Assembly: GCA_965235115.1 (NCBI GenBank)
Contig: OZ249437.1
Location: 30,628,001 to 30,692,000 of the forward strand
Reading direction: 5' to 3'
DNA: 64,000 nt
Source of the DNA: Laetmonice hystrix
Taxonomy: Eukaryota
Shown one piece after another: positions 184-50,200 of the stretch. The notes under the pieces are model-generated. The model had not been told where the DNA came from. It saw only the letters and a program-made list of their open reading frames with translations, and searched no databases. Position 1 is the stretch's first letter. Each line of letters opens with the position of its first letter. The position numbers were made by a program, and so were the translations under genes.

Positions 184-3100
184 TTCGCCATGCAAACGGG
201 CCTGGACTACCTGTCGATGAGAGCATGGGTGTGCATTTGGGTGACGGTCACCGCGGTCGTAATGGTGGCTGTAGAGGGCTCATTCATCGTCCGTTATTTC
301 ACGAGGTTTACCGTGGAAATATTCTCAGCTCTGATTTCGCTCATCTTTATATACGAGGTCGTTTATAAGCTATTCAAGGTGAGCCCCCTTTGATAACTTC
401 CGTCACCACTGCATGGGAAACATATTTATCGTAGTTGCCACGAGATTGTATTGTTTAGCTTTATAGAGTAAAATACGGTAGGCCTATAGACGATTTCTTC
501 TTTATATCTCAGGTGCGTGTCCAGGGGGAGGGGTCGAAGAGCCCCCGATCTTTTTTGTAGGTTGATATTGAAGCACGGGTGCTCCTGATGTGAGGCTTTG
601 ACCTCCACATCGTTGCCCCCCCTCTCCCCGCGATATATCGTGCACGTACGCGCCTGTATTTATATACCTATAAAGTTTCTTTTCAGGAAGGGTAGGCCTA
701 TTTGGGGTAAGATCTTTTTTTCATATTCACAATTTATACGCCTTATTAAGTAAGGTATTTTCCCGTTTTTTATTTGCCCACCAGGTGTTCCTCAGTCACC
801 CCCTTCAACCGTACTACCCACATCCCCTTCCTAATGGAGTTGACAGTTCCGCAAATTCTTCCATGGATGTCACTGTGGACCCAAATCTCACTGAGGTCTC
901 AGGAGAGTCTTTGAGAAATCCAAGCATTGTAAACCAGCCAAACACTGCCTTCCTGACTGTGATTCTTACTCTCGGCACGTTTTCCATCGCCTACTTTCTC
1001 AAACAGTTCCGTTACAGAAAGTTACTTTGGAAGAGTGTAAGTTGCCCACGTAGACAAATATTTTATATTCTAAACTTGGTAAACTTTTTTGGTGGGAGAT
1101 AGCTGATCAATTTCCAACTTTTCAGGCACGCCGAATACTGACAGACTTTGGTATCCCTATAGCCATTGTGGTAATGGTACTTGTTGACTTCTTAATTAAA
1201 GATACATACACTGAGGTTGGTAATCATCCTTTTAAAAGCAAACACCCAATATCTCTCATTTCAATGACTCTAAAATGCAATGCAGACATGGGGTGATAGG
1301 TTAGATAAGGCTTTAGACTACATGTATATCGACAGAAATGGAGAAATCTATAATGAAATTAAACATTTCAGTTGCCTGTTTTCGCTATAAAGCGATCGTC
1401 TTATGGCTGGTTGTTGACAAAATCGTTGACCTGACATTGACTTGAACAGTCCATGAAATTCATCGGACGATGAACCGATGAATTTCATTGTTCAAGTCCC
1501 TGCCAGGTCAACAACCAGCCACTAGACGATCGCTTCATAGCGGCATCAGGGCCCTGAAATGTTGAATTTCATTAGGTTCATCCATTTCTATGGGTATACA
1601 TTTATTGATTTATGTAGTCTCAGGCCTTTTGAGTCATTGAAATGGGAGATAGTCGGTATTCGCTTATTATTATTACAAGTAATAGTATATATCTCCTGAT
1701 GGACCTAGAGAATGCAGTGCTTATTTAGGTTCCCAGCTGTTGATGCACATGGTATAATTTCTAGGCTTCTGTCGCCCAACTGACAATTTGACAGAGTAAA
1801 AAAGACGGTGACGACTGAATACATGCAGTGATGTTTTCAGAAACTTTACGTTCCGTCTGGTGGGATCAAACCAACCAACGCTGCAGTACGTGGTTGGTTC
1901 ATCAATCCGCTAGGGGTACAGGCTCCGTTACCAATCTGGGCCATGTTCGCATCAGTCATCCCTGCCTTACTCGTCTTCATCCTGATATTCATGTCACATA
2001 TGATAACGGCGTAGGTAATGTATGGGCACTACCCCAAGTGTCAATGAGCATGGCGTATAATATGCTAACCATTGTTTATACAAATGGTGCAGAGAGAATA
2101 TGAAAATAAAACTCATCAAAGGTGGGGACAAGCTCGAGTAGGCCACTTACCTGTAGAACAAGCTGATCCATATTTCAGTAGGAGTACATGGTTAGTATAG
2201 CAGAATTTCTCATGCCCAACTCCGAAGAAACCCCCTTAATTCCGTTACCATACACCAGTATTTCCAGTGTTCAAATACCCCAAACGACAAAAAATTATAT
2301 TTCTCTAAGACATTTATAATGCTTTACATTTTAATTGTATTGATACATTTAGAATTATAGTCTTTCAAAAGAACAAGAAGGGTACGGGATTCCACCTGGA
2401 CCTTCTGCTGATTGGTGCGTTTGCCACGTTGGCGGGCCTGATCGGTGCACCTCTCATGGGAATTGGTCTGGTGCGCTCCGTCTCCCACGTGTCCTCACTC
2501 AGCATCTTCAGTCAGACTCACGCTCCTGGAGAGAGGCCCAAGCTGACAGGTGTCTACGAACAGCGGCTGACGGGACTGGCAGTCCACATAATGATTGGTG
2601 AGATTGGAGGCCCAATTCTGATTATCTCAGCGATTCTGTCCATCTTGCTTCCAAAGTTTTACTGTTACACTCCCTCCATGGACACGGAGCTGTGGGGGGG
2701 GGGGGGGGGGGGTCAATGAGCGGGTCAATGAGCGGAGTGAGACAAGAATTACTAGGAGAGAAAAGTTGGAGCGAGTTAGGCTGTGATCAATGTTAGGCTG
2801 CCCTCTCCCCCAAATCCTCTGATGTAAGTTAACAGATCCTCTGATGTAAGTTAACAGAGTGCCCTGGTGCTATTTCCAGGTGTGTCCGTGTTGATGGGAC
2901 CACTGCTGAGACAGATCCCTCTGGCCGTCCTGTTTGGTGTCTTCTTGTACATGGGCATCGCCTCCATGCGTGGCGTGCAGCTTTTTGAACGAGTGGAGTT
3001 GCTCTTCATGCCAAGGAAGCACCACCCTGACGTGTGCTATGTGAAACAGGTATAATGGAAGACTGTTTACCACCTCTGCTCAGGCACGGATACAATATGG

Positions 3101-4064
3101 GGGGGGGGGGGCGCTGGGGGTTTAAGCTCCTCCCTAGCTTGATCAATTTCGAATATTGGGGGGGGGGGGGGGGGAATGACCCCAGATCCCCAAAAGCGCA
3201 CCATATATACGGTGACGACAACTCTATGATCTCGCCACTCACCCAGTTTTGAAATCTGCTATTGTTTGGAGTTCTATGAAGGTCACTTTTGTAAGCTGAT
3301 CTTTTGAACTTCTCTGCATGAAAAATGTCTTCTTGCAGGTGAAAACTTACAAGATGCACATCTACACTTTGATTCAAGTGATCTGTCTTGCTGTGCTCTG
3401 GGCGGTCAAGTCAACAAAAGCCGCTCTAAGCTTTCCGTTTCTCCTGGTCCTATTGGTTCCACTCCGTCGTTACCTACTCCCAAAGATTTTCAGTGAATTG
3501 GAACTTCTCAATGTAAGCTGTTCTGTGACATTCCAAATTCAGGTATTTTTAACGGGCATCAGTCAATCCATACTGCGCGCACAAACGCAGTGCAGTTAAA
3601 AATACGAGACTATAGCTGGGAACTAATATTGTCTGTAAAGTTCTGGAAATTTGTTCAAAGTACATGGTGCCTGCCCTATACAAGCCACTCTTTGTATAAC
3701 AATGCATGCCTAGACATTTGGAAGACGTTCTTTTAGGCCTTTCTTCAAATTTAAGGTTTTTAAGAAATCTTTATTTTTAGATTTGACGCAAGCGCTCTAT
3801 TTCGTTGTATCTATAATGGCCTAGGGCAGGTTAGTTAGACAAGTCAAACCCCTAGTCAGTTCTCCGCAGTTATCGGAGAACTGACTATAGGGTGCCGATT
3901 TGTCTAACCAAAGGGCAGGTAGGCCTACCCCAGGACCTGCTCTTGGAACCCCGCCTGTTAGGCCTATAGTGATACAGCCGAATATTAATCTATTTATTTT
4001 CTAGCTGGACCGCAATGATGAAAACAGCAAGGTCGTTACTGACACCAAGGATGAACCAGATTGA
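184..4064 (+). CDS. SLC4 anion-exchanger family paralog 'SLC4-A'; 3' part only (TM4 to C-terminus), 5' exons lie left of the window
   Basis: Eight phase-consistent AG/GT exons: 184-378, 785-1036, 1126-1215, 1841-2010, 2353-2597, 2880-3049, 3339-3512, 4005-4064 (TGA at 4062-4064). Translation carries SLC4 membrane-domain motifs ([76 protein letters not shown]). Exon boundaries and phases match SLC4-B. Confidence 0.95.
1322..1601. mobile_element. Palindromic MITE in an SLC4-A intron
   Basis: Long imperfect inverted repeat (gctataaagcgatcgtc..tggctggttgttgac / gtcaacaaccagcca..gacgatcgcttcatagc) with a central perfect 14-bp stem atgaaattcatcgg/ccgatgaatttcat. Confidence 0.75.
2815..2858 (+). 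repeat. 22-nt minisatellite, 2 copies (TCCTCTGATGTAAGTTAACAGA)
   Basis: Two exact tandem units about 20 nt upstream of the 2880 acceptor; the same unit occurs 5 times at the homologous position in SLC4-B. Confidence 0.95.
3834..3908. repeat. Short palindromic hairpin element
   Basis: 14-bp stem tagtcagttctccg/cggagaactgacta with a 7-nt loop, plus an outer gttagacaa/ttgtctaac pair. Confidence 0.7.
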
Positions 4065-35205: not shown

Positions 35206-38200
35206 TCAAACAGGCATGTGCGCCTGCTGGTAGAAATCTGGTTCATCCTCTCCATCATTAACGTCGTCAGTACCGTCATCATCTCGGTCGAGCTAGAAGG
35301 ATATCAATCAAGATTTCAATGCATCATTACGAAACAACCCCTCATATCATATAACATATTACAGAAATCGATGAATAAACCAACTGGGTTAGAGGGGGCA
35401 TATGTTATTCTATACATTAGAAGCGGTGCTATGTTCTTCAATTACGTACGGTTTACATTAAAACTGTGGCTCCGGTTTCAAGATGAAATGACTTACATTG
35501 CTGAGCTCTTTCTCAGTAAAGCATCGTGGCAGGAGAAAACTACGTAGAGGAACCATGAGGATGAGGAAGAAGGGGAATCCCAGGGCGGCTTCTGTGGACT
35601 TCACGGCCCAGAGTACAGCAAGACAGATCAACTGGACCAACGTGTAAAGGTGCATCTTGTGGGTCTTCACCTGTAAAACGTATATGGTGGTGGTGGGGGT
35701 TAATAAACCATTTACATCAATAGAGCAACCTATCCACTTCACGTAGAATTGACAATAATAACTCTGGTCTGCTTGACAATATTGACATAAAGTTCATTAA
35801 ACGCTAGTATAAAAAAATGACCTACCCGCTTCACATAGCACACGCCAGGGTGGTGCTTCCTTGGCATGAACAGCAACTCGACTCGTTCAAAGAGCTGTAC
35901 ACCACTCATGGAGGCGATTCCCATGTACAAGAAGACACCAAACAGGACGGCCAGAGGGATCTGTCTCAGCAGTGGGCCCATCAACACGGACACACCTGGA
36001 AATAGCAGCAGGGCACTCTGTTAACTTACATCAGAGGATCTGTTAACTTACATCAGAGAATCTGTTAACTTACATCAGAGGATCTGTTAACTTACATCAG
36101 AGGATCTGTTAACTTACATCAGAGGATCTGTTTTTGATGGCAAATCAAAAATGGAGAGGAAAAGGGACCATAGGGGGGAGATAGGGGAAGGAGACCTCCG
36201 AGATATTCTCACCAATCATTATGTGGACTGCCAGTCCGGTCAGCCGCTGTTCGTAGACACCTGTCAGCTTGGGCCTCTCTCCAGGAGCGTGAGTCTGACT
36301 GAAGATGCTGAGTGAGGACACGTGGGAGACGGAGCGCACTGTGGCCACCACCATGAGAGGTGCACCGATCAGGCCCGCCAACGTGGCAAACGAACCAATC
36401 AACAGAAGGTCCAGGTGGAATCCCGTACCCTTCTTACTTTTTCGACTGACTATCATTCTGCATGGACAAAAAAAAAACATAGGTTAATAAAATACAGAAC
36501 ACCAAAATTAAACATAAAAAAAAGTCCGTACTACTTTGGTAGACTTTGGCGTCATCTGTTATTCAGCACTTTTCCTGAACTACCTCTTCCTTTCAACAGA
36601 CCATGGGCCAAGTGTTATTGACGGAGTCGTGTACACTTACCCTGTTATCATGCACTCCATGAATATCAGGATGAAGACGAGTAAGGCAGGGATGACTGAT
36701 GCGAATATGGCCCAGATTGGTAACGGAGCCTGTACCCCTAGCGGATTGATGAACCAACCACGTACTGCAGCATTGGTTGGTGTGATCCCACCAGACGGAA
36801 CGTAAAGTTTCTGTAAATATAGATTCCTCTTTATAATCTCAATTTTGAGCAGGATGCACTGCAAATAATCTAATAAATGTATACTCGAATAAGTACCCTG
36901 GCGTTTATGTAATCGAGCATATAATTGGATTTTTGAATCACAATCGATTCATAATGCAGGTAAGCCTATTTTGTGGTACATCGCCACAAACACGAAATCT
37001 GGTTGAAAGTAACTATCCATAGCCCTGACCTTATCCCTAGCTCCTAACCCGGGTCCCTACACCTCCCAAAATATTCCTGTCCTATCCCTGACCTTAACCC
37101 GAACCCCTACCCACAATTTTTGAGGGAAAGTTACCATGGGGGAATAACCTATTTTGGACCGTAATTCTTTGCCACAGACCTATAATCTGCCATCTGACAA
37201 AAGAAGCTAAGAGTTTTCGCCTTCGGAGCGAAAAGGGGAACTTAATAAGTTGGAATTTTTATTTATATTGGCCTACATGTTTCGGACCTGCCACGGTCCT
37301 TCATCATTCCTCAGGTTATAGGTCAGTGTCAAAGAACTGTACATAATAGGCCTACCTGCAAGGCACTTTTTACCTTGGTATATCACCAGCAAATCATACG
37401 GCAGAAACACTAAGTAGTACACAATCACATTGACTACATTCCTCCTACTAACAACAAAGGTTTCAACTTGAATACGAAATCATAAATAAGTCTGTTAGCT
37501 CTCTACTATTGTTACATACCTCAGTGTATGTATCCTTGATAAGGAAGTCAAGGAGCACCATTACTAAAATGGCTATAGGGATACCAAAGTCTCCCAGAGC
37601 TCGGCGTGCCTGAAAAGTTGAAATTTAATGCTACTACAAATTTAACAACAGCATCAGTAACGATAATCTCCGGCACATTTTATGTTACATCCTCGACGAA
37701 AGATCAACGTGATCATGAAACCTTTTCTTCAAAGTTCTCTTGTAGGTTACTGCTAATAACGGAATTCCCAATTAAACCCGTTTCATGAAGCAACAAGTAA
37801 ACAACAATTCCTCTATTATTCAAATTTGAATCTTGTCCTAGTAACAAGTAGAAGTCTGGTACTGAACCTGGTAAGACCTACCATCACAGTTTCCCAGGCC
37901 CAGTTTACAAGCAGAATCAATCAAATTGAAGTCACAAGCTGAGGTTATATAAGCTCCCGCAGGATAAAACCTTTCTTCAGCATGCCCACTAAGTATTTTA
38001 TACGTATTCATAGCCACACCACTTAAATTATTTGCAGATCAAAATTGTTCTCAAACTCAAGAGTGGCCAAAGTTTGGAACACATGGGATACCATTTGACC
38101 AGAGTGGTACGGCAGTTACAGGGGGCTAAGTCTCATAGAACATTTGAAATCCTACAAACTTACAGAACTTATTATATGCCATTCAGACAATTTATCTTAT

Positions 38201-41200
38201 TATTTATTTCTGTAAAACTTCTGATGGATCTGATATGTGGACATGAATTTTTGTTTCTTTACCGACTATTTTGGTCATCAGAAATTTTTCTGCTTCTGAT
38301 TTTAATGAGCCTAGGCTAGGAACTTTGCGTGTGAACCGGGCCAAAAGCTACCGGGGGGTAATTTGTTTTAATTTCCTCCTTATAATACCTAGCTGTAACT
38401 GACTTGTTACCCTGAATTAAATCTCAATAATCTAATCTCAATAACAGTACTGTAGATCTTACCTGGGGATATGTTTGGTACAATTACATACCGGTAATTT
38501 TCCATTTTTGCTTAGTAAACGAAACGAAACGGACCAAGTCTAATATATCTCCAGACAATAGCCACATTACTGGCCCTGCATTAGCTGATTACCGATTTTT
38601 GCCAAAACGTGAGAGTAATATTATTACCCTTGTTACCTGGGGTCAATGACGGGCAACTTACACTCCTGCCAAGGAACTTGCTGTTACGGAACTGTTTGAG
38701 AAAGTAGGCGATGAAAAACGTGCCGAGTGTAAGGATCACAGACAGCAAGGCAGTGTTTGGTTGGTTTTCAAGGTTCCGGTTTCCTGGCAACTCTTCTGAG
38801 GCCTCAGTGACATTTGGGCCTAAAGTGACAACTTCCATGGAAGAGTTTTCGAAACTGTCAAATCCATTAGGAATGGGTGGAGGGTAGTATGGTTGAAGGG
38901 GGTGACTGAGGAAGACCTGGTGAACAAACAGAAATCATGTCAAAACCTTGCTGTTTCAGTGGTTCGGATCAGACTAATTTAACAACTGTTTCAATTACTA
39001 TACATAGAACTTCCAGGTGAACCATGCTTTATCGCTTGTGAACCTGCAAGGAAATTACAAAATTGCAGTGGCATTTATTTTGTGTCATTTCTTTTTACTC
39101 TTGCCCAAAAATTACTGTTAATATCAAAATATCATTAAAGTAGATCTTGAGGGTTGATTACTATGCTACCAGATTTAAACAACTCATTATTTCCATTTTG
39201 AAAGCATCTGACTTTCTTTCTTCTTTTATCAAACAATCAATATACCTTGTAAAGCTTGTAAAAGACTTCATATATAAAGATGAGAGAAATCAAAGATGCA
39301 AATATCTCCATGGTAAATCTGGTGAAGTATTGGACAAGGAAGGAACCCTCGGCAGCCACAATGACAATGGCGATGACTGTCACCCAAATGCACACCCACG
39401 CTCTCATCGACAGGTAGTCCAGGCCCATCTGAAGGGTGAACTGGAACCACAAAGGGGTGCAAACATAGTTCTCACGATATTTCTATTTTCATTAAATGAA
39501 GTACATGTATACATACAAGTTCATGCAGAATAGAGCCATCTAAAACACTTGTTTTGAGACATGTTAAAAGTAAAGTAAGCTATTCATCACACGATTCATT
39601 TACTCATTACATATTTGATAAATTTCATCTTCAGATTAGAAGATGGGACAAAGATATTAGCAATTAAAACTGAGAGCTGGGCACAGCAGTAAGGGTGGCA
39701 GGGGTGTGGACATGTGCGCCCCCCCCCCCCCGACCTGCTTTTATACCGACACTGCAACTTTAAATGAACTCGCTCAGATTTGGGCGCTCTACGCCTTTTG
39801 TCCTCCAAAACATAACGTTTCCAAATAGGGGGATGGAAATTTCTACCTGATAGAGGCCCTCTTCAAAGACAATGATGGGCCCAGTACATCCGACGATAAG
39901 CAACGGTTGGGCAGACAACAGGGCGAACACGACACCACTGATGGAGGTCAGGATGAGTAGCTCGCTCACTCCTAACATTTTGTCGGTCTTCTCACCTTCA
40001 AATAGAAAATACTGTCATCGACCGGGCTAGGAGGGGTCACGTACTGGAGCATGGAAGTACCCTCTACAGTTGGACACTTACGACATCAAAGATATATCAT
40101 TTATTTTTATTCCCTTACTGAAAGCATAATTGATGATGATAAAGAAAACAATCTTCCTGAAAATTCATTAGCTCTAAACATACTGAGTAGACCCCCGAAG
40201 GTGATAGCAGGTGAAAGGCAGGCGAAGTAGATGAAGAAGAAGGTGGCCAGACACTGAAGGTTGAGACCGTCCCGGATGTCGCTCCAGTACTTAGGGAACC
40301 TCCGCCGGATATCATTGACGACTCCACCAAACGGACGCTTTGTACGTTTGAGAGGGTCTCCAAACGGATCGTCTTCTGGCACAGGCGCTGAAATGAACAC
40401 GTGAACTCGTTCATGTAGGTGCAATCTCTACTACAGAATATAAAGTCATCTCATACCTAGCCAAATGGGTTGTCCTCAGTTTTAGTAGTTGCAAAGGATG
40501 GAGAAGATTGAAAATGTAAAGGAGCGTCTTCTCCTAAAGGTAGTAACAAGAACAACAGCTTACAGCTTTTATAGCCACTTCTTGTTACTAAGTTGGGGTA
40601 AGTAACTTAGCAAAGGTAAGTCTCATACATACGTAGTTTTTCCTTGGTTTTCAGTTCTCTCTTCTTTGCCTTCTCCCGCGCCATATCCATGATGGGAAGA
40701 AGTGTTTCTTTGTCCCAATCTCCAGGGGGCAGCACCAACGAATCGTCAAGGAATTCATTAATGGCACCAAGGAGATCTTCACGGCTGTCTGCTTGATATG
40801 CTACGTCATGGAACCTCTGAAAGCAGTTTCCTCGAGATGTAAACGCTCTTCAAAATGACCACCCAGGCTTAAATTGAGAACAGGTCATTGAAATGGTACA
40901 ATGGTAACACTGCTATGACTCACCGTATTTGCCATCAATGTGGAGATAGAGCGTCCAATCTGGTGGTAATCCAGCGAGCCGCTTTCCGGTCCCATCAGCA
41001 CAAACAAGAATCGCACCGGCAATGGTACTTCGGTCAAGTTACCTAGGTATTGTCCCTTTGCTAACCGCACAAACGCCATGACTGGTTTCTCCAAGAAGTC
41101 AACAGAACCGACCAGAACTGATGTGGCTTCTGCTCCCTTTGGGATCTTACGTAGGATGGGGCCACTGAGTCCAGGGCTCTGGGGCTCGGCTGGAGGAGTC

Positions 41201-44200
41201 TCCAGTACATCCACGTGTTTCTGTTAATGACACATGTCAATCCACGTGTAACATTTCAATGGCATCAGTAAGATCAGAAAGCAAACATACAATGGCAAGA
41301 GTAAGAGCAAAGGGTAAAAGCACTTAGCAACAAAATAACCTTAATTGAGAAAAAAATTGATGAATATATGAACTTACAAGGACTTCATTCATATCAATTT
41401 TCACGTGAGATTTTTTCTTGGTCTTTGTTAGTCCAGTTCCATTTGGCTGATCTTCTTTTTCCGATTTGGTAGATAAGGTGCTTTCCTTCTTCTCAGCATT
41501 CTCCATCGCATCTGAAAATGAGTGAAACTCATTTATTTCTATGCCTTTTCTTAGCGTCCCCTTCACCTTTTACCTAGATTACAATTCCTCACTCCTTAAG
41601 ATTATATGTAACATTTCGTTAACCTAGCATCATTGCTCTTTGCGTGTTCTCTATAATTGTTTTTTTTACCACATTACACATTCCCGCCATGATTTGAGTC
41701 CATTTCAACTTGTTCAGAGTGTCTTCCTGCCACTCTATTTTCGTGTTTTCTACTGGAATGGGGTTGATGATTACTGAGAATACTTCCATACCTCCGGAGC
41801 TGCGACTCCAGTTTGACCGCAAAACATTTCCCAAACTTCGGGGGAACGATGGGAGGGAGGACCTACGGCCTGAACTTGATCTACGACGAGAATCTCTGAA
41901 AGATAACATTAAACACCCATTTCATATTACTGCAGAAACTTACGGATTACCATAACAATAATTGCTTTAGTTATCAATATTCGTCATCAGTTCCAAGTTG
42001 TTACGACATGCACAATTACATACATTCTTGCTTGTCATCTTTCAAGGAGAAAGAAAGTTTTTATGTACAATATATAGGCAAACTAATCCAGATAAATGAT
42101 TGATACTTGGTAAGAAGAAATACATATGTCTGGCTACTGGAATCGCACATAATATTTAAGTATATGTGTTGATTACACATATACAATATACTTGGATATT
42201 TAATGCATAAAGAAACGACACATTACACGTCTTGACAAGAGTGCATTACCATTAACATTGATGGAATAAAACTTCGGCAACTATAACTTCATTTACAAAT
42301 ATTATCAGAAATGAATATCTGCGGTTCGGGCGAGAAGCAGAGTTTGGCAAGAAAAACAGAAATAAATGCTGAACTCTGACCTTTCATTTGCTAAATTTTG
42401 CCCACTTAATCACTCCCTGTTAGGCCCGGATCCATCAGTGGAACTAAAGTCCAGTTCCTACTCAAAAATATGAAGATGCTTTCTGACGACCTTTTTGCCA
42501 GTAAACTGACAGGCCACTTTGCCATGATAAGGTCAGAGTTAACTCAAAGGCTTTAACCAGTTCTACAAGGTCGTATACTGTGTGTGATTCTCCCACCTGA
42601 TGGGCTCAAGCACATGATAGCTCAGACTGAAGCTCCAGATACCTGTAGAAAATGGCACAAAGGGATTTGTTCCATAATATCAGCGCTCACCCGGCTGTCC
42701 TCTCCCCCCCCCCCCCCCCCCCCCCCAACAGAACGGCCCGAGTGTAGCAGACCAATGGACGCATGGTCCCCAGAAAGGAAATCCAAGCCTGCCGTAAACC
42801 ATGGTACTACTGACTGTACATGCACGGCTGCCTTTAGTCACTCCTTCAACCCCAAGATTCAGCACATTTAAAGCGACTACGCTGTCAGAATGATGAGCAG
42901 AGGAAGCATGCTCAGGGGACTCGTATACATTCAGTAATTACTTATTTGTCTATATTGCAGAAATACACCATATATACACACAAAATACGAAGAGATGGGG
43001 ACCATAAAAAATACTCCCATCTATCCTTTCGTTTATCATGGTGTGAAACATTCTAGGCCTATTACACATGGACAGAAAATTGCAATCATCTCTTTTTGCT
43101 TGACAGCATAATGCCCCACTAACTAAGATGGACTTGACGTTATTGTTTTACAACGTCTAAGCGGGACTATATTGCGTGTCGTCACCAGACTGACGGATAG
43201 CCCTGTTTATCTTGACCCAAGTATACCGAACCCAATTCAGGAGCAGCTGATGTCAAAATATTGATGCATTATCAAAATTTTCGCGCGTGAGCACTTAAAG
43301 TGTGTGTCATAGCCATCATGTCTGAACCAAGGTTTCCGTCTTACTTGTATTAATACATTTTGCTGCGTCTTTATTGATACCAACTTGTGAATACCAATAA
43401 ACACCAAGGCCCGTATGCATAAATCTATACTTTGGTTTAACCATAACCTGGTTTGGTTATTTCTCTGTCCCTAATTTAAGCTAAACCATCTTCCTGCATA
43501 CCGACACTTATACCGGGTGTAACTATAAACCGCTGGTTTTCTTGAATCCCATTTATGCATACGGACAGAGGTACAACTGATGAGTTAAACTTCAGTTTTG
43601 CTAAACTCCCATTAAACCACCTTTATGCATACGGGCCTAAATGTCTCATCTGTCCGACTGATTCCAAAAAATGACAAAATAATGTAGTTGGGACTGAAAA
43701 AAAAATTAACATACAAACTGTGCAAATTGTCCTTGAACGTGACATAGTGATCTCTTAACTATAAGACATGAGTTACAACGTTTTCACCGGCATTTTGGCG
43801 ATAGGCGGAACAGGCAAGTGAATAGCCAGCAACACGGACAGAACTTATATGCAGACAGCATCTCTGAGTCCTGAAGAACAAAACATCAACAGTAAGAAAA
43901 TGCCAAACCTTTGACCAGTCTGTTGATCAGCACCTTTTTCGACACCAAACATTGCCAATAGTTCCCTGTGATGTAGAATACAAACCAAACATGCGTTTTA
44001 AGAGATCATGTGAGGAATCATGTACTTCGTAGATTCATTGGTGACCTTCAAGCATGCACGCATGCATGATACCCTTTTATTTTATTTTATTTTTGTGGTG
44101 GTGGTGGTGGTGGTGGTGGCGGTGATGGTGGCGCTACTGGTAGTGGTGTGAAATTAGCAAATGTTGCTATTACTCATTAGACTACAGCACCTCAGTATTT

Positions 44201-47200
44201 ATGTTCTGACCTTGTGTAATGTGTTTTCAACTTTTATTTAGAGGGAAAATATCCACTCTGCGATCTGAATACATGTATCACATTTCTGTTCAAATTCCTT
44301 CAACTTGCATTTACGCTTTCTCAGACTTTATAATCATGGTTAAATATGGTTAAAATATTCAAATCTTGATTTTAAAGTTGATTAAAGGCCCGACCCTAAT
44401 ATATTACGACCAGATGTAACATATCTTTCACCCCTAGCTATATGATGTATAACTATGATGATCATGCACCCTCCCATTTGTGAGAAAAATGAGATACTCC
44501 AATATACGACTCAGCCCTGAGAGTTGACATTTCGAAACAACGTGAACCGTTGAATCACGTTATTGACAAGATGTCTAAGATTTGTGGCGAGTGGGGCTCT
44601 TGAGATGCCACTGGTGTCGGCGCATTTTTCTCCTCCATAATTGGTGATTGTTTGAACTCCAGGTTACAGATAATGGGTAAGACTGACTCATACTGGCAGA
44701 GGGCAATTTCGTCGTTATATGTTCGGGCTAGGCCTTTAAATATAGATCTAGGCAACACTTTTATACACAATAATATCTGGTCAGAATCAAATAGTGTGAG
44801 CCATAAACCACTGTGTTGATGTTGAGGTTTGCAGCGAGGAAAAAAGAGCACTATGTATAAAGAGAATGATGAAAAAACAAGCTTCCGTTTTTTAATCATG
44901 ATAATTCTTGATCTTGCTGCATACTTTTCATTAAAAAAAAGAAAAACAAGCATTCTAGTCTCAGAAGTTCAACGACCCAAATCTAGTTCCCGGCTGTATA
45001 CACAAACATAATAGCAACACAAGGCACTGTGTGTACCTGAGTTGTTGTGCAAGAGGGTCAAGAAAGTGTAACAGAGGCAAATACTAGCCTTGGCGTTGGA
45101 TGGGGGTCTAAGACGGCCATGCGTGTAATCACAACCAGGAGTGAGCATACAGCTGAGGTGTGGGGTGGGGCTCAAAGAGGCAGATTCAAACAACGAATGA
45201 AAAACGGGAAGATCTATGAGCCATTTTAGCAGAGTGCATGATCCAACCAGCAATGCACAGGGGACCCTCGGGTTTTTGTTCGGTTCACGCACTTACCCAG
45301 GTGTTAAAGATCCTTCTAAACTTTGTCCATGGAAAATGGAAACACAATTCATATAATCAACCACAAGGCAAAACAAACTTGCAATAAACATGGGGCATGT
45401 TTTAGACCCTCTTCCTCTATTTGTGCAATACATTGAAGCACATGCTGATATTTATTCCTGCCAATCGACTCCTACAATCTTCATAGACAACAACTTACAT
45501 GCTCAAAACAACTATAAATATCAATCATACTGTGCTTTCGGGTTCATGCCTCAGAGCCATTAAAAAATGACGTCACTTTTTAATGACTCTTAATTAAACA
45601 TCTTTCAAAAACCATGGGTTATTATGGCAATGGCTCGGGGAGGGGGGGGGGCAAACACGGCTTTTAGAAAACTATAAAAAAAATTACAGGCTGCTTTGTG
45701 TCTTCTTGGAGATTCATTTATACAAAAATCAGAATTCGGGAGAGGCTTACTGAACCGAATCATAGAACTCAACATATAGCTTGTCCTAAAAACAACGCTT
45801 AAGTCCATATCCCAGTTTTTCAAAGATTCTCAACTTGTGTAAAGCTTACTTATTAAACTAACAGGCTTCTGATTGGCTGGTCTGCTGAGGCCAGCCAATC
45901 AGAAGCCTGGGCGTTTACTTATGTAAGCTGGCTGAGAATCTTTAAAAAACTGGGCCCAGATTGAGAAAGATCGCAGCGGTTTCTCTATTATACTGTTGGG
46001 GGAGGGATTTGTTGTTTGACATACATAACATGCCTTTGGCGGTGAATGTGCGACTTTAAAGTTCATGTTTTTATTCCTACCCAGTGTGAATTCTCCTCTG
46101 TAAGTCAAGCATAGATAACCCTGCCAAGTGAGTCGGTCACTTGTATTCTATTTTTGGGTACTTTTTTCAGCAATCATGTACATGTCCTCGCATCAAGGTC
46201 TACCAAATAATGTGTAATGGTTTTTATTCAGCAGACCAAGTGTGGCGTTAAGGGGGGAACACACCTGACGCGATGCGACGCTATTGTGAAAAGCTCCTAA
46301 TGGTTTTCAGCGAGTGTGAACACACCTGGGCCCGGTTCGCGATACTAAGACATCTTGCTTAAGCATAAGCTTAACATTTCTGATTGGTTGATTGCCACAC
46401 ATTTAAGCTGCCTTGCTTAAACCGGTGACAACTAGCCAATCAACTGCGTTAAACTTAAGCTTAAGCAAGATGTCTTAGTATCGCGAACCGGGCCCAGAAG
46501 CTGCACGTCGCTGGAACGTCACATGTGTTCACACTCGCTGAAAACCAGTACTAGGAGCTGTGTGTCGTGTCAGGTTTGTTCCCCCACTTTACCACTAATT
46601 ATGGAACTGTATGACCATATTTTTATGTACGGCCGTTTCAGTGAGTGAGGAATGGTGGTTTTACGCCAAGTCGGCGGCCGTTTCAGAGGTTATTACATTC
46701 GCCAGCTTACCTATTCTGGACACCTCCAAGTTTATTCTGAATTGCACGAGCAGTTCCAACATTGTTTACAATGTCAGGGTTTCCGCCAGAATGTCACCTT
46801 TTTTTTGGGGGGGGGGGGAGGTTGAAGCACTTTTAGGGTGTGTGTATACCTCGGGTACGCATTTTGAAAAAAGTAAAGCTTAATGTGATAAGTAACATGA
46901 GACACTTTATGTAACTTATAATAAAATAGTTACACTCTACTAACTTCATTAAAAGATTACATGCCACACATGCATTTACTGTCAACATTCAAGACCCGAC
47001 ATCACTGCTACTTTCACAGTGTCTACTATTATCAGGAAGGACTTTTGGATCAACCTTCATAGCAATCAGGCCGTACATGACCAGATCACTCAAACTAACA
47101 ACCTTTGCCTCTAGAGTCAAACACAAAAAGAGAACGAAACCTACCTGGGACTATCCGAGCCTATCCCCGCAAAGGAGCTGTTCCTACGCAGAAAGCCTCC

Positions 47201-50200
47201 TTGTTGATTCACGTGTCTGGAAGGGCATCCAAGTACGTGTATTACTACAAATGTACTAGGGTAGTCTGGACAAGTTACCAGGGTAGTCTGGACAAGGTAC
47301 CAGGGTAGTCTGGACAAGGTACCAGGCTATTTTGGGAGCAATTTGCGAGGGAATGGGCGAGGCAAAGACTTTATTTATTTTTTTTTGGGGGGGGGGGCAC
47401 ACAGTTAAAAGGATGGCATAATCACTTTTAGTTACCCCTATTTTGTTAGTTGACAAAGCCCCTCTAATTAATTGATGTAATAATTGGTCTTAGAGGAACT
47501 GCATGGTGTGTACAAGTTATCATATCTTATACTTCGGGTGCGGCTGTTTGCACAGGACCGTTAAAGGGCTTCTGAGAACCTCTTGGACATTTTATCTGTT
47601 ATCTTTAATCACCACTGTATTATCTATATCTCTATATCAACATGGACCTCCAAGAATGCACTTCCTGGAAGGACAGTATCATAAGCGTTCTTGGAACCTC
47701 TCAGCACAACCCTGCCGTGCAATGACAAAAGGAAGCAAGTCCAACTTTCATCAAGTGTAGATTTGGATTCAGGGAAGTAAGTCCTATCTATCAATGGGTG
47801 TATTTCTGCTAAACATCCTTCTATGAAGCTACCAGTCACATGACAGAAGGAAGCACGTCCATCCAACTGCACTGTCTTGTTAAACAACTTGTTTATGTCC
47901 ATTTCTCGAAACTTGAACTTTTGGACTTGCTTCCTTTTGTCATTTCACGGCAGAACCCCACCGTGAACACCAGTCGTTTACGGTGGAATTGTCTGACGGA
48001 GGTCATGGCAGCGTGGTGGTGGTGGATAGTGGAAGGTTCGTACTTGTGTTTGAGGAGGAGAGCTTTGATGACTTTTCCTTTGCCCTCCGCGTCGAGTTGG
48101 TCGGTGAGCACCATCTGGTCGACCAAGTGGTTAATAATGGCAGGAAGGTCCTCAAGATCGAGGTCAAGTACCACCGCACCTGGAACGACACCAATAAACA
48201 ACTAAATCATCTTCTTCTACATATCGTACAAACCATCAGACCTCAACATGCACATCACACCTCTTTTAAACCGCAATCCCCCCCCTCTATAAGCCTTAAG
48301 TCCTAAGAAGATATTTTGGGACAACTGACTTACAAACGTGTCCCTTTAATTCCGTGTTGGGTATAATCTGCTCAATATTTTACAGAGGAGTTTCAGGGTC
48401 AAAATGTGTGGCTTATAATTATTATACAGGGGATTACTGTCCTTACTTCTGTTGTGATACTTTTATTTCAGCTTTGTTTGTTTTGTGGCCTGTCAAAAAT
48501 GATTTACATTCATACATTTTTAAATAGAATCTCTTTATGTGATGATGACATATAAGAGAGCAGGCTGTGACGGCCTGGTCTACATAATGACAAGTGATTC
48601 AGGCCATGTGAAAAAAAGGACATTGCAGTCAACATGTTGGCCAATTTCCATTTCTCTTTAACATTATGTTTCAAGACGTGGTGTACCGTAGTTAAAAGTA
48701 CACCCAGCAGGAGTAGATTTAGAGCGTGGTTATTTTAGGAGTCAGCAGGACTCCCAAGTCGGAAAATTTAGGAGTCCGCCAAAAAATGTGTGAGTCCACT
48801 AAGCACTAGCCTATAGAATATACAATGGGACTGGATGTAAAAAAAAGAGACCAATAATTAGAGGCCGTGTTATGCCATAATAGTCTGGGATCATAAACAG
48901 GCCACCACGCCAGGAGTCCTGAGTGAAAAACTAAGTCAGTCTTGTGACCCCTGCTGAGTAGTAGATATTCGGTTCACCGAGACTGGGCAATCGTCACCTG
49001 GTTCTGGGTTAAAATCTGCATCAATCAATCTGGGCGACAGTCGAACTGAACTGATCATAATGGGGTACAAACAACGTGGAATGAATAAAGTTTCCCCTTT
49101 TTTAACAGGACAGGTTAAAGATATTTTTCACACTGTGGGATAGGAACGTTTCTCAAATCATAGACCTGATAGAGCTACAAATTGTGGTTCGTGATCACAA
49201 ATTGTGAACCCCTCCAGGATGTCCTTTTAAGGAAGATGACAAACCTTGGGCCAGGCACTGTCGGAGTTCTAGAAGACTGTGGAATGAGAGTGAAGCTACA
49301 TGAGGTTTTCCCCAGCGCGTGGCCTCAGCTTCCACATCTTCCTCAAACTTAATCCAACGAGCTGTCTCCTGCCACTCATACTCGGCGTTCTCACCAAGAT
49401 GCAGTTCCTCAAGTTCGACGAAAAGCTGCACAATATCAAGAGGACACAAGATTGAACTATGAAGTACTAGAGGCATTAGGTGTCACTTTAGGATTAGCCA
49501 TCAGGGCAGAGACTTCTTCAATGGTGTACCAGTTTAGACTCTGGAATATTGCTCACAAACATAATTTAGTAACGGTTAGTAAGATAGCTTTGAATTATGG
49601 GTGAACGATTCACTGTAGAATCGATGCCAATATGCGACCCTAGTAGCAATAGAGGTAAAAAAAATTCTTAACGTGGTTAGACATTGAATCTTTAGACCCC
49701 ACAAAACCTAACCAGCCAGGAGCTACTGGGGCTTAAATTCCTTTGCCCCTACAGAGTAACTGTCCGCGTACCTGGACCCCTGGCTCACTGCCAGTGGGGA
49801 GATATTTTAGACATGAATCCATGCCCTGTCAAGAAATTCATAAGCAAAATAAAACAAACCTCATGTGGACTGTGGTCGATAACCGATTTCGGACCACCAC
49901 TAGATTTTCCAATTCTCACGACTGAAGCGAGAGCACTGTGTTTCCGCCTACGAAGACCTCTTGCGTCACTTAATCTATGGCCTGCAAAGAAATGACTACA
50001 GCTGCAGCAATGCCTTTGGAGATTTGCATATTTTTTGTGAATAAACCCTACTTCTTTTCATATCTCTGACCGTGCCAACGTTCTACCTTGAAATGTTTTG
50101 CAGATCCAGCAATATTCCCTCAAAGCCTTGGAGAACAGTTTTGTTAAAGTTTACCTAAAATAGATGTTTTTTAAAAGTCTTCCCTATTTTCCATAATATG

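What the first reader, a model, noticed from the sequence alone, without database searches (positions are those of the whole stretch)
1994..1999. SLC4-A has lost the family's key acidic residue (AE1 E681 equivalent): FMECMIT becomes FMSHMIT
Seen: SLC4-B reads ATG GAG TGC ATG (M-E-C-M, 36660-36649) and SLC4-A reads ATG TCA CAT ATG (M-S-H-M). All six nucleotides differ while the preceding 153 nt are 98% identical. Known: the motif aligns to human AE1 FLESQIT, whose E681 lines the anion site and mediates H+ coupling (E681Q changes sulfate/proton handling). The acidic residue is also kept in NBCe1 (D754) and plant BOR1 (D311). Inference: an intact SLC4 with Ser-His here should have a different substrate or coupling, such as divalent anions, an uncoupled leak or a His-based pH sensor. 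It may be an undescribed SLC4 subtype.
Basis: partly seen in the sequence, partly recalled or inferred. Interest (0 to 1): 0.9.

Follow-up and report, generated by a model that had tools for sequence, protein, structure and literature searches.

The report
Short anion exchanger lacking its key glutamate
An invertebrate (probably annelid) genome carries an intact, selectively maintained, shortened copy of a chloride/bicarbonate exchanger gene whose universally conserved acidic residue in the ion-binding pocket is replaced by Ser-His, so it most likely moves a different ion or works differently.

Summary
Window 1994-1999 reads TCA CAT (Ser-His). It aligns without gaps to E681-S682 of human AE1. 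Paralog B reads GAG TGC (Glu-Cys). DNA contigs from three runs of one sample confirm the letters.

SLC4-A is not a wreck. All 10 membrane-domain exons are open (568 codons) and all 18 splice sites are intact. dN/dS against B is 0.28.

A and B are a gene-conversion mosaic. Per-exon dS runs from 0.10 to 2.3. Two small divergence islands sit in the converted exons, and both lie in the anion pocket:
- TM8: Ser-His in A, Glu-Cys in B.
- TM10: GIGL in A, VVAT in B, at AE1 S725-T728.

- A has no recognisable N-terminal cytoplasmic (Band_3_cyto) domain anywhere nearby, and it lacks the C-terminal MPV tail.
- Three more short paralogs on the same chromosome carry Gln-Tyr at this position and have also lost the R730 arginine.
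- In mouse AE1, E699T was inactive for Cl- and SO4 transport. Only E699Q carried sulfate.

Among 395 animal SLC4 sequences, none truly lacks Glu/Asp at this position.

No RNA data exist for this organism, so expression and the 5' end are unknown. I read A as a new acid-less, short variant of the AE type. Its function is inferred, not shown.

The parts
184..378 (+). SLC4-A exon e3 (TM5 region). Exons e1 and e2 lie upstream of the window at G000:C2 positions equal to window -5502..-5299 and -310..-162.
   Evidence: A/B alignment with conserved AG/GT sites; open frame in the spliced model; PF00955 hits
785..1036 (+). SLC4-A exon e4 (large extracellular loop, keeps two N-x-S/T sequons, and TM7)
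1126..1215 (+). SLC4-A exon e5
1841..2010 (+). SLC4-A exon e6 encoding TM8; 93.5% identical to B's exon, with identical runs up to 65 nt
1994..1999 (+). TM8 island: TCA CAT = Ser348-His349 of the model, at the position of AE1 E681-S682
2353..2597 (+). SLC4-A exon e7 (TM9-TM10)
2459..2470 (+). TM10 island: GGA ATT GGT CTG = G-I-G-L at AE1 S725-T728, directly before the conserved Arg (R730 equivalent). 9 of 12 nt differ from B.
   Evidence: pocket residues from PMC8714990
2811..2879 (+). Intronic 22-nt tandem repeat just upstream of e8, about 98% identical to the matching intron of B. It shows that homogenisation is DNA-level gene conversion.
2880..3049 (+). SLC4-A exon e8 (TM11-12)
3339..3512 (+). 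SLC4-A exon e9 (TM13-14; K851 equivalent kept); the most diverged exon (71% nt identity to B, dS 2.3)
4005..4064 (+). SLC4-A last exon with TGA stop; the tail ends ...DEPD and lacks the last 9 residues of B (FYQQAHMPV)
35206..49428 (-). SLC4-B, the full-length AE-type paralog, lying tail-to-tail with A: Band_3_cyto exons (49428..40649) plus 10 membrane-domain exons (40387..35206)
36652..36657 (-). SLC4-B codons GAG TGC (Glu-Cys), the canonical acidic state
36340..36351 (-). SLC4-B TM10 codons GTG GTG GCC ACA (V-V-A-T), close to the outgroup state (x-A-A/T-V/L-R)

Best explanation
SLC4-A is a real, intact, selectively maintained, lineage-specific short paralog of an AE-type (Glu/Arg-type, Na+-independent) SLC4 anion exchanger. 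It encodes only the 14-TM membrane domain, with no Band 3 cytoplasmic domain and no C-terminal MPV tail. Its central anion site (S1) has been rebuilt. The TM8 glutamate is Ser and its neighbour is His. The polar N-cap of TM10 (AE1 S725/T727/T728) is Gly/Gly/Leu. The rest of the site is kept: the R730 arginine, the K851 lysine, and the TM3 and TM5 site residues. These steps are shown by sequence. The following steps are inferred. Removing the carboxylate next to the retained arginine should abolish fast electroneutral Cl-/HCO3- exchange and E681-type H+ coupling. It should also leave a more positive and roomier pocket. I therefore expect A to carry a different anion, most likely divalent or larger (sulfate- or oxalate-like), or to use a different coupling, with the new His as a possible titratable group. 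Gene conversion with the neighbouring paralog B keeps homogenising the core-domain exons. The two pocket islands are spared, which is what selection for a distinct binding site would produce.
For: Letters and alignment; confirmed in reads. Intact gene: 568 open codons and all splice sites conserved. Selection: dN/dS of A versus B is 0.28 and of A versus Q1 is 0.18. Under neutral drift at 0.1 substitutions per site, the chance of no stop codon is under 1%. Among sample variants in the unconverted exons, 5 are synonymous and 4 non-synonymous. Gene conversion: exon dS ranges from 0.10 to 2.3, identical runs reach 101 nt, flanking introns are mostly unalignable, and one tract runs 69 nt into an intron. 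Islands: 15 of 18 nt differ against 26 of 567 elsewhere (p=2e-16), and 4 of 6 pocket positions differ against 13 of 187 other positions (p=6e-4). Both islands lie at residues named as lining the site (PMC8714990 sect. 27 and Fig. 6; PMC13263692 Table 2). Rarity: none of 395 SLC4 sequences truly lacks E/D here. Effect of neutralising E681: Cl- transport is lost and Cl-/SO4 exchange becomes electrogenic. Persistence of the type: Q1 and Q3 are also short, acid-less and intact at dS of about 1 from B.
Against: There is no expression evidence, because no RNA run of this organism is indexed. No first exon or promoter was found. The only start candidate is an in-frame ATG 24 nt upstream of e1, in a weak context. 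The closest tested mutant, mouse AE1 E699T (a hydroxyl side chain like Ser), carried neither Cl- nor SO4, and only E699Q did. Gene conversion from B could in part keep a dead copy looking intact. No ortholog from another species is available to show that Ser-His is old. No structural model was made.
Confidence: 0.5

Rival explanations
1. SLC4-A is a partial duplicate on its way to becoming a pseudogene. It lost the promoter, the cytoplasmic-domain exons and the C-terminal tail. The pocket changes reflect relaxed constraint. The open frame is partly kept by repeated gene conversion from the functional neighbour B.
For: No Band_3_cyto exon lies within 60 kb or anywhere else on the chromosome. 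The C-terminus is truncated. No RNA evidence exists. The AE1 E699T, E699G and E681C mutants are inactive. Conversion with B is clearly present.
Against: The unconverted exons e2, e3, e5 and e9 (dS 0.4-2.3) are also open, with intact splice sites and dN/dS of 0.07-0.28. Neutral drift at that depth would almost surely add stops. Q1 and Q3 share the same short architecture and have stayed intact at dS of about 1. Under relaxed constraint the differences would not cluster in two pocket islands.
Confidence: 0.2
2. SLC4-A is expressed but does not transport. It acts as a partner or modulator, for example by forming heterodimers with B or another SLC4 through the gate domain, or as a sensor or scaffold.
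For: SLC4 proteins are obligate dimers (established knowledge; PMC8714990). Single substitutions of E681/E699 other than Gln kill transport. Loss of both cytoplasmic ends fits an accessory role.
Against: A dead site would have no reason to resist conversion to the B state, yet both pocket islands are spared while their flanks are homogenised. The remaining anion-binding residues (R730, K851, TM3 and TM5 positions) are kept. The gate-domain exons that form the dimer interface are the most diverged from B.
Confidence: 0.2
3. The Ser-His codons are an assembly or sequencing artefact, or a chimera of paralogs.
For: The flanks are nearly identical to B, which can confuse assemblers. Unitigs break exactly at 1993/1994.
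Against: Contigs from three runs, including a divergent one that may be the other haplotype, span 1964-2404 with TCACAT unchanged. The 26-mer occurs once in the genome. No other paralog carries these letters.
Confidence: 0.01

Closest known systems
AE1-AE3 (SLC4A1-3), Na+-independent Cl-/HCO3- exchangers
   Same: Best PDB sequence matches are AE1 and AE2 (E about 1e-14 and 1e-12). A sits in the AE clade of the tree. It keeps the TM10 arginine (R730), the K851 lysine, the TM5 LIFIYE motif, the same fold family (PF00955 positions 1-544) and the same exon structure as B.
   Different: There is no TM8 glutamate (Ser instead). The TM10 N-cap is Gly-Ile-Gly-Leu instead of polar residues. There is no Band 3 cytoplasmic domain and no C-terminal ...MPV tail.
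Engineered or chemically modified AE1: E681 converted to an alcohol (Woodward's reagent K/BH4), mouse E699Q and E699T
   Same: The carboxylate is neutralised at the same position. Ser carries a hydroxyl, like the hydroxynorvaline product and like Thr.
   Different: Those are single changes in a full-length AE1. The alcohol product and Gln give electrogenic Cl-/SO4 exchange, whereas Thr, Gly, Lys, Arg and Cys are inactive. A also carries His at +1 and a remodelled TM10, so its behaviour cannot be read off from these.
Q1-Q3, the three tandem short paralogs in the same genome (G000:C2 20.66-20.78 Mb)
   Same: They share with A the lineage-specific clade, the absence of a Band_3_cyto domain, a short C-tail, no TM8 acid, and Gly-x-Gly (or Gly-Ile-Thr in Q3) at TM10.
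   Different: They carry Gln-Tyr instead of Ser-His. They have also lost the R730 arginine (Thr or Ser) and T685. Q2 and Q3 also changed the TM3 and TM5 site residues.
Na+-coupled SLC4s (NBCe1, NDCBE, NBCn1) and SLC4A11/BOR1
   Same: Same fold and the same TM8 position lining site S1.
   Different: They carry Asp (NBCs, BOR1) or Glu (BTR1) here, and the NBCs lack the TM10 Arg. The genome's own four NBC-like genes read FMDQQIT.

Membership tests
SLC4 / HCO3_cotransp (PF00955) | Membrane domain matching the family HMM over its full length | tested here: met
   A's exons hit PF00955 positions 1-54, 52-102, 101-185, 289-350, 356-432, 428-495 and 488-544, all above the cut-off. The spliced model is 568 aa and 81% identical to B.
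SLC4 / HCO3_cotransp (PF00955) | Acidic residue (Glu or Asp) on TM8 in site S1 | tested here: not met
   Ser aligns to AE1 E681. All 393 non-artefactual sequences of the 395 surveyed have E or D.
AE-type (AE1-3-like) anion exchangers | Phylogenetic placement with AE rather than NBC sequences | tested here: met
   The clade of A, B, Q1 and Q3 (support 100) lies inside AE-type sequences, with NBC-type sequences as outgroup. The best PDB hits are AE1 and AE2.
AE-type (AE1-3-like) anion exchangers | Glu on TM8 paired with Arg on TM10 (E681/R730) | tested here: not met
   Arg is present (…GLVRSV) but Glu is replaced by Ser. 207 of 208 AE-type sequences with both positions readable have E+R.
AE-type (AE1-3-like) anion exchangers | N-terminal Band 3 cytoplasmic domain (PF07565) | tested here: not met
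   tblastn with three AE proteins at E<=1 finds nothing in the 60 kb upstream. A genome-wide PF07565 scan finds only B's exons on this chromosome.
AE-type (AE1-3-like) anion exchangers | Cl-/HCO3- exchange activity | not testable with these tools
   Needs heterologous expression and flux or pH assays.
Na+-coupled SLC4 (NBC/NDCBE type) | Asp and Thr on TM8 (DQQIT) and no Arg at the R730 position | tested here: not met
   A reads SHMIT and keeps Arg. The genome's NBC-like genes read FMDQQIT.
Expressed functional gene (versus pseudogene) | Open frame, intact splice sites, purifying selection | tested here: met
Expressed functional gene (versus pseudogene) | Transcript with a start codon | tested here: inconclusive
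   No RNA runs are indexed for the organism. The only candidate is an in-frame ATG 24 nt upstream of e1.

The most novel reading that the evidence does not exclude
A and the three Gln-Tyr paralogs define a new functional class of SLC4 carriers. They are membrane-domain-only proteins without the TM8 carboxylate. They work as uncoupled or electrogenic transporters of divalent or larger anions (sulfate, thiosulfate, oxalate or carbonate) in an annelid-like animal. Their binding-site identity is actively protected by selection against gene conversion from the canonical exchanger next door.
Probability: 0.3. Interest if true: 0.8.

Novelty: new variant of a known kind. Interest (0 to 1): 0.6.

Why it matters
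The TM8 Glu/Asp is treated as invariant in SLC4 proteins, from human AE1 to plant BOR1. It is central to models of anion selectivity, H+ or Na+ coupling and electroneutrality. A natural, selectively maintained AE-type protein lacks it, keeps the partner arginine and has co-varying changes at the TM10 N-cap. This amounts to a ready-made evolutionary experiment on what this residue does. It yields concrete swap mutants to test between A and B, which are 95% identical over the core-domain exons apart from the islands. The locus is also a clean example of binding-site islands that survive gene conversion between neighbouring paralogs. If the short acid-less genes transport sulfate-like anions, that would add a new physiological role for the family in invertebrates.

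Tried and rejected
1. RNA evidence: two run searches, with A and with B as control, found only DNA contigs from one sample. Expression is therefore untested, and this says nothing about silence.
2. Orthologs: the TM8 exon searched against 1.84 billion representatives and 5.8 billion clustered proteins gave nothing above 67% identity. No close relative of this organism is in those collections, so the age of Ser-His cannot be dated from other species.
3. A search for a shared 5' exon by tblastx found only repeat fragments. It compared A's upstream 35 kb with Q1's upstream 21 kb, and Q1's upstream with B's N-terminal exons.
4. Pfam scans of ORFs upstream of A, in its 5-kb first intron and elsewhere in the window found nothing.
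5. Sister relationship of A: AU tests on unconverted and on converted exons leave A, B and the Q pair as an unresolved trichotomy. The A+Q grouping in the whole-protein tree (SH-aLRT 87) is therefore only suggestive.
6. Origin of the island: I looked for an inversion or palindrome explanation of the 6-nt island and for a donor copy elsewhere in the genome. None exists.
7. Two apparent non-acidic hits in the survey (P0104, P0130) are exon fragments read into introns, not real exceptions.
8. Structure prediction was not run.

Full report
**The observation**

On the plus strand, window 1991-2002 reads ATG TCA CAT ATG. On the minus strand, 36660-36649 reads ATG GAG TGC ATG. Both lie near the 3' end of homologous 170-nt exons, A 1841-2010 and B 36810-36641. 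The first 153 nt differ at 3 positions. All six bases of the two codons then differ, and the next eight are identical.

At first sight A's donor looked damaged. In fact both exons end in phase 2 with a GT donor (A GC|GTAGGT, B GG|GTAAGT), and the next exon continues the frame.

A phmmer search of the 56-residue exon against all PDB chains gives AE1 (E=1.4e-14) and AE2 (E=8.9e-13) as best hits. The alignment has no gap near the motif: [10 protein letters not shown] against ILIFLESQIT ending at T685. Ser therefore pairs with E681 and His with S682.

DNA contigs from three public runs of one sample span 1964-2404 and show no change at 1994-1999. They include one divergent contig that may be the other haplotype. 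The 26-mer across the codons is unique in the 627-Mb genome.

**The gene**

The window is G000:C2:30628001-30692000. I fetched 60 kb upstream and aligned A to B exon by exon.

A has ten membrane-domain exons. In window coordinates they are -5502..-5299, -310..-162, 184-378, 785-1036, 1126-1215, 1841-2010, 2353-2597, 2880-3049, 3339-3512 and 4005-4064. All 18 internal splice sites are AG/GT at the same positions and phases as in B. The spliced frame is open for 568 codons to a TGA. The exons match PF00955 from position 1 to 544 of 551.

A is 81% identical to the membrane domain of B. It keeps the following site residues:
- the TM3 site motif (VGCTGP);
- TM5 (LISLIFIYE);
- the R730 arginine (…VRSVSH);
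- the K851 lysine (VLWAVKST);
- two N-x-S/T sequons in the large extracellular loop.

**What A lacks**

B has Band_3_cyto exons from 49428 to 40649. For A, tblastn with three full-length AE proteins at E<=1 finds nothing upstream of e1 in 60 kb. A genome-wide PF07565 scan finds no exon on this chromosome other than B's.

e1 keeps its acceptor site, so an unknown upstream exon is possible. Alternatively, an in-frame ATG lies 24 nt upstream of e1 with no intervening stop. Its context is weak.

A's last exon stops nine codons early and loses the FYQQAHMPV tail. The ...MPV ending of vertebrate AE1-3 is from my own knowledge.

**A is not alone**

The genome holds about eleven SLC4 loci:
- Four NBC-like genes read FMDQQIT.
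- One gene looks SLC4A11-like.
- B reads FMECMIT.
- Three tandem genes at C2:20.66-20.78 Mb (Q1-Q3) read FMQYM[VI].

Q1 and Q3 are intact over nine exons with the same splice positions. No Q locus gave a Band_3_cyto hit, and no such exon lies in the 21 kb upstream of Q1. Q1 and Q3 end in a short acidic tail. All three Q genes have replaced the R730 arginine by Thr or Ser.

In a tree with AE proteins from many phyla, A, B, Q1 and Q3 form one clade (support 100) on a long stem. The expansion is therefore lineage-specific. The order among A, B and the Q pair is unresolved. The whole-protein tree weakly groups A with Q (SH-aLRT 87). A also shares four derived traits with the Q genes: no cytoplasmic domain, a short tail, no TM8 acid, and Gly-x-Gly at TM10.

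**Selection**

- dN/dS is 0.28 for A-B, 0.18 for A-Q1 and 0.19 for B-Q1.
- A three-taxon split gives the A branch dN of about 0.06 and dS of about 0.24.
- In simulations of neutral substitution on this CDS, the chance of no stop codon is 0.6% at 0.1 changes per site and 0 at 0.2.
- In the exons too diverged for B reads to be laid on A, the sample's variants are 5 synonymous and 4 non-synonymous. That is below the neutral 3:1 expectation, but the numbers are small.
- A has therefore been under purifying selection for most of its history. Very recent death cannot be excluded.

**Gene conversion and the islands**

Synonymous divergence between A and B varies 20-fold among exons:

| Exon | e6 | e7 | e8 | e1 | e4 | e5 | e2 | e3 | e9 |
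|---|---|---|---|---|---|---|---|---|---|
| dS | 0.10 | 0.13 | 0.23 | 0.24 | 0.27 | 0.40 | 0.44 | 0.81 | 2.3 |

Identical runs reach 101 nt. Most introns cannot be aligned, but one tract runs 69 nt into the intron before e8. This is DNA-level gene conversion, concentrated on the core-domain exons.

Inside the converted exons lie two islands. The first is the Ser-His codons, where 6 of 6 nt differ. The second is 12 nt in e7, where 9 of 12 differ. There A reads G-I-G-L, B reads V-V-A-T and Q1 reads G-V-G-T, directly before the arginine. Outgroup annelids and nemerteans read x-A-A/T-V/L-R, like B.

Together the islands hold 15 differences in 18 nt, against 26 in 567 nt elsewhere (p=2e-16). Of six a-priori pocket positions, 4 differ, against 13 of 187 others (p=6e-4).

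The positions are exactly those the literature names around the AE1 substrate pocket. E681 lies on one side and R730 on the other, with polar S725, T727 and T728 nearby (PMC8714990; PMC13263692 Table 2). I saw it independently.

**How unusual is it**

I tabulated the E681 and R730 positions in all 395 SLC4 sequences collected by three database searches (tables). They span sponges to vertebrates.

Every sequence has Glu or Asp, apart from two short fragments that read into an intron. Of 208 Glu-type sequences with both positions readable, 207 pair Glu with Arg.

There are caveats. Two of the searches excluded proteins shorter than about 520-770 aa. No close relative of this organism is in the collections. 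B's best outside matches are Owenia at 60% and Capitella at 58%. The mitochondrial COX1 uses the invertebrate code. The animal is therefore probably an annelid.

**Mechanism**

Converting E681 to an alcohol, or mutating mouse E699 to Gln, has three effects. It abolishes Cl- exchange. It makes Cl-/SO4 exchange electrogenic. It removes the normal H+ coupling.

The same paper, however, tested E699T, the closest analogue of Ser. It carried neither Cl- nor SO4, as did G, K and R. E681C is also dead. A single Glu-to-Ser change would therefore most likely inactivate an AE1.

A is not a single mutant. It adds His at +1. It strips the TM10 N-cap to Gly/Gly/Leu, which enlarges the pocket and exposes backbone amides. 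It keeps Arg, Lys and the helix dipoles. The pocket islands are spared by conversion while their flanks are overwritten, which is hard to explain unless the site is used and must differ from B's.

I therefore favour an altered-substrate or altered-coupling carrier (0.5). The alternatives are a decaying partial copy (0.2) and a non-transporting partner (0.2). The specific substrate is inference only.

**Verdict**

I class A as a new variant of a known kind. It is of clear interest to SLC4 specialists, but it has no evidence of expression and is so far seen in one genome.

Noticed in passing
G000:C2:20660000-20780500 (loci L016, L017, L018, L019, L020): Three tandem short AE-derived paralogs (Q1-Q3) read FMQYM[VI] at TM8, a natural Glu-to-Gln change. 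They have also lost the R730 arginine (Thr/Ser). Q2 and Q3 changed the TM3 (VNCTTVF) and TM5 (VIVTYE) site residues as well. Q1 and Q3 are intact over 9 exons, and dN/dS between them is 0.55.
   Followed up: partly
L017 (C2:20681693-20689152) and L018 (C2:20734309-20734804): Q2 has exons e1-e7 at one place, while the only matching e8-e9 lie about 45 kb downstream. This is either a very large intron or insertion, or a broken copy.
   Followed up: no
window 1235-1628: A repeat of about 390 nt in SLC4-A intron 5 has over 100 copies genome-wide at 70-82% identity. Each copy matches on both strands, so it is a foldback or MITE-like element.
   Followed up: no
window 2811-2879 and 35996-36132: A 22-nt tandem repeat (CAGATCCTCTGATGTAAGTTAA-like, carrying splice-site-like GTAAGT and AACAG) lies just upstream of exon e8 in both A (2-3 units) and B (more units). 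It is about 98% identical between the two.
   Followed up: partly
window 4005-4064 versus 35206-35292: A's C-terminus stops 9 codons before B's and loses the conserved ...MPV end. Q1 and Q3 also end in short acidic tails (LDPDEHTDE[LP]DKEA[DE]Y).
   Followed up: partly
G000:C2:5232500-5242000 (L021): A further SLC4 gene with KKGTGYHWDL, resembling SLC4A11/BTR1. No Band_3_cyto hit.
   Followed up: no
G000:C35 (L026): Contig 35 is the mitochondrial genome. In COX1, TGA reads as Trp, ATA as Met, AGA as Ser and AAA as Lys. This is the invertebrate code, which excludes echinoderms and tunicates. Together with B's best matches to Owenia and Capitella, it points to an annelid.
   Followed up: partly
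window -5527 (G000:C2:30622474 region, L009:4474): A 2-nt deletion relative to B puts an ATG in frame 24 nt upstream of A's exon e1, inside what is intron in B. It is a possible start codon for a membrane-domain-only protein.
   Followed up: partly
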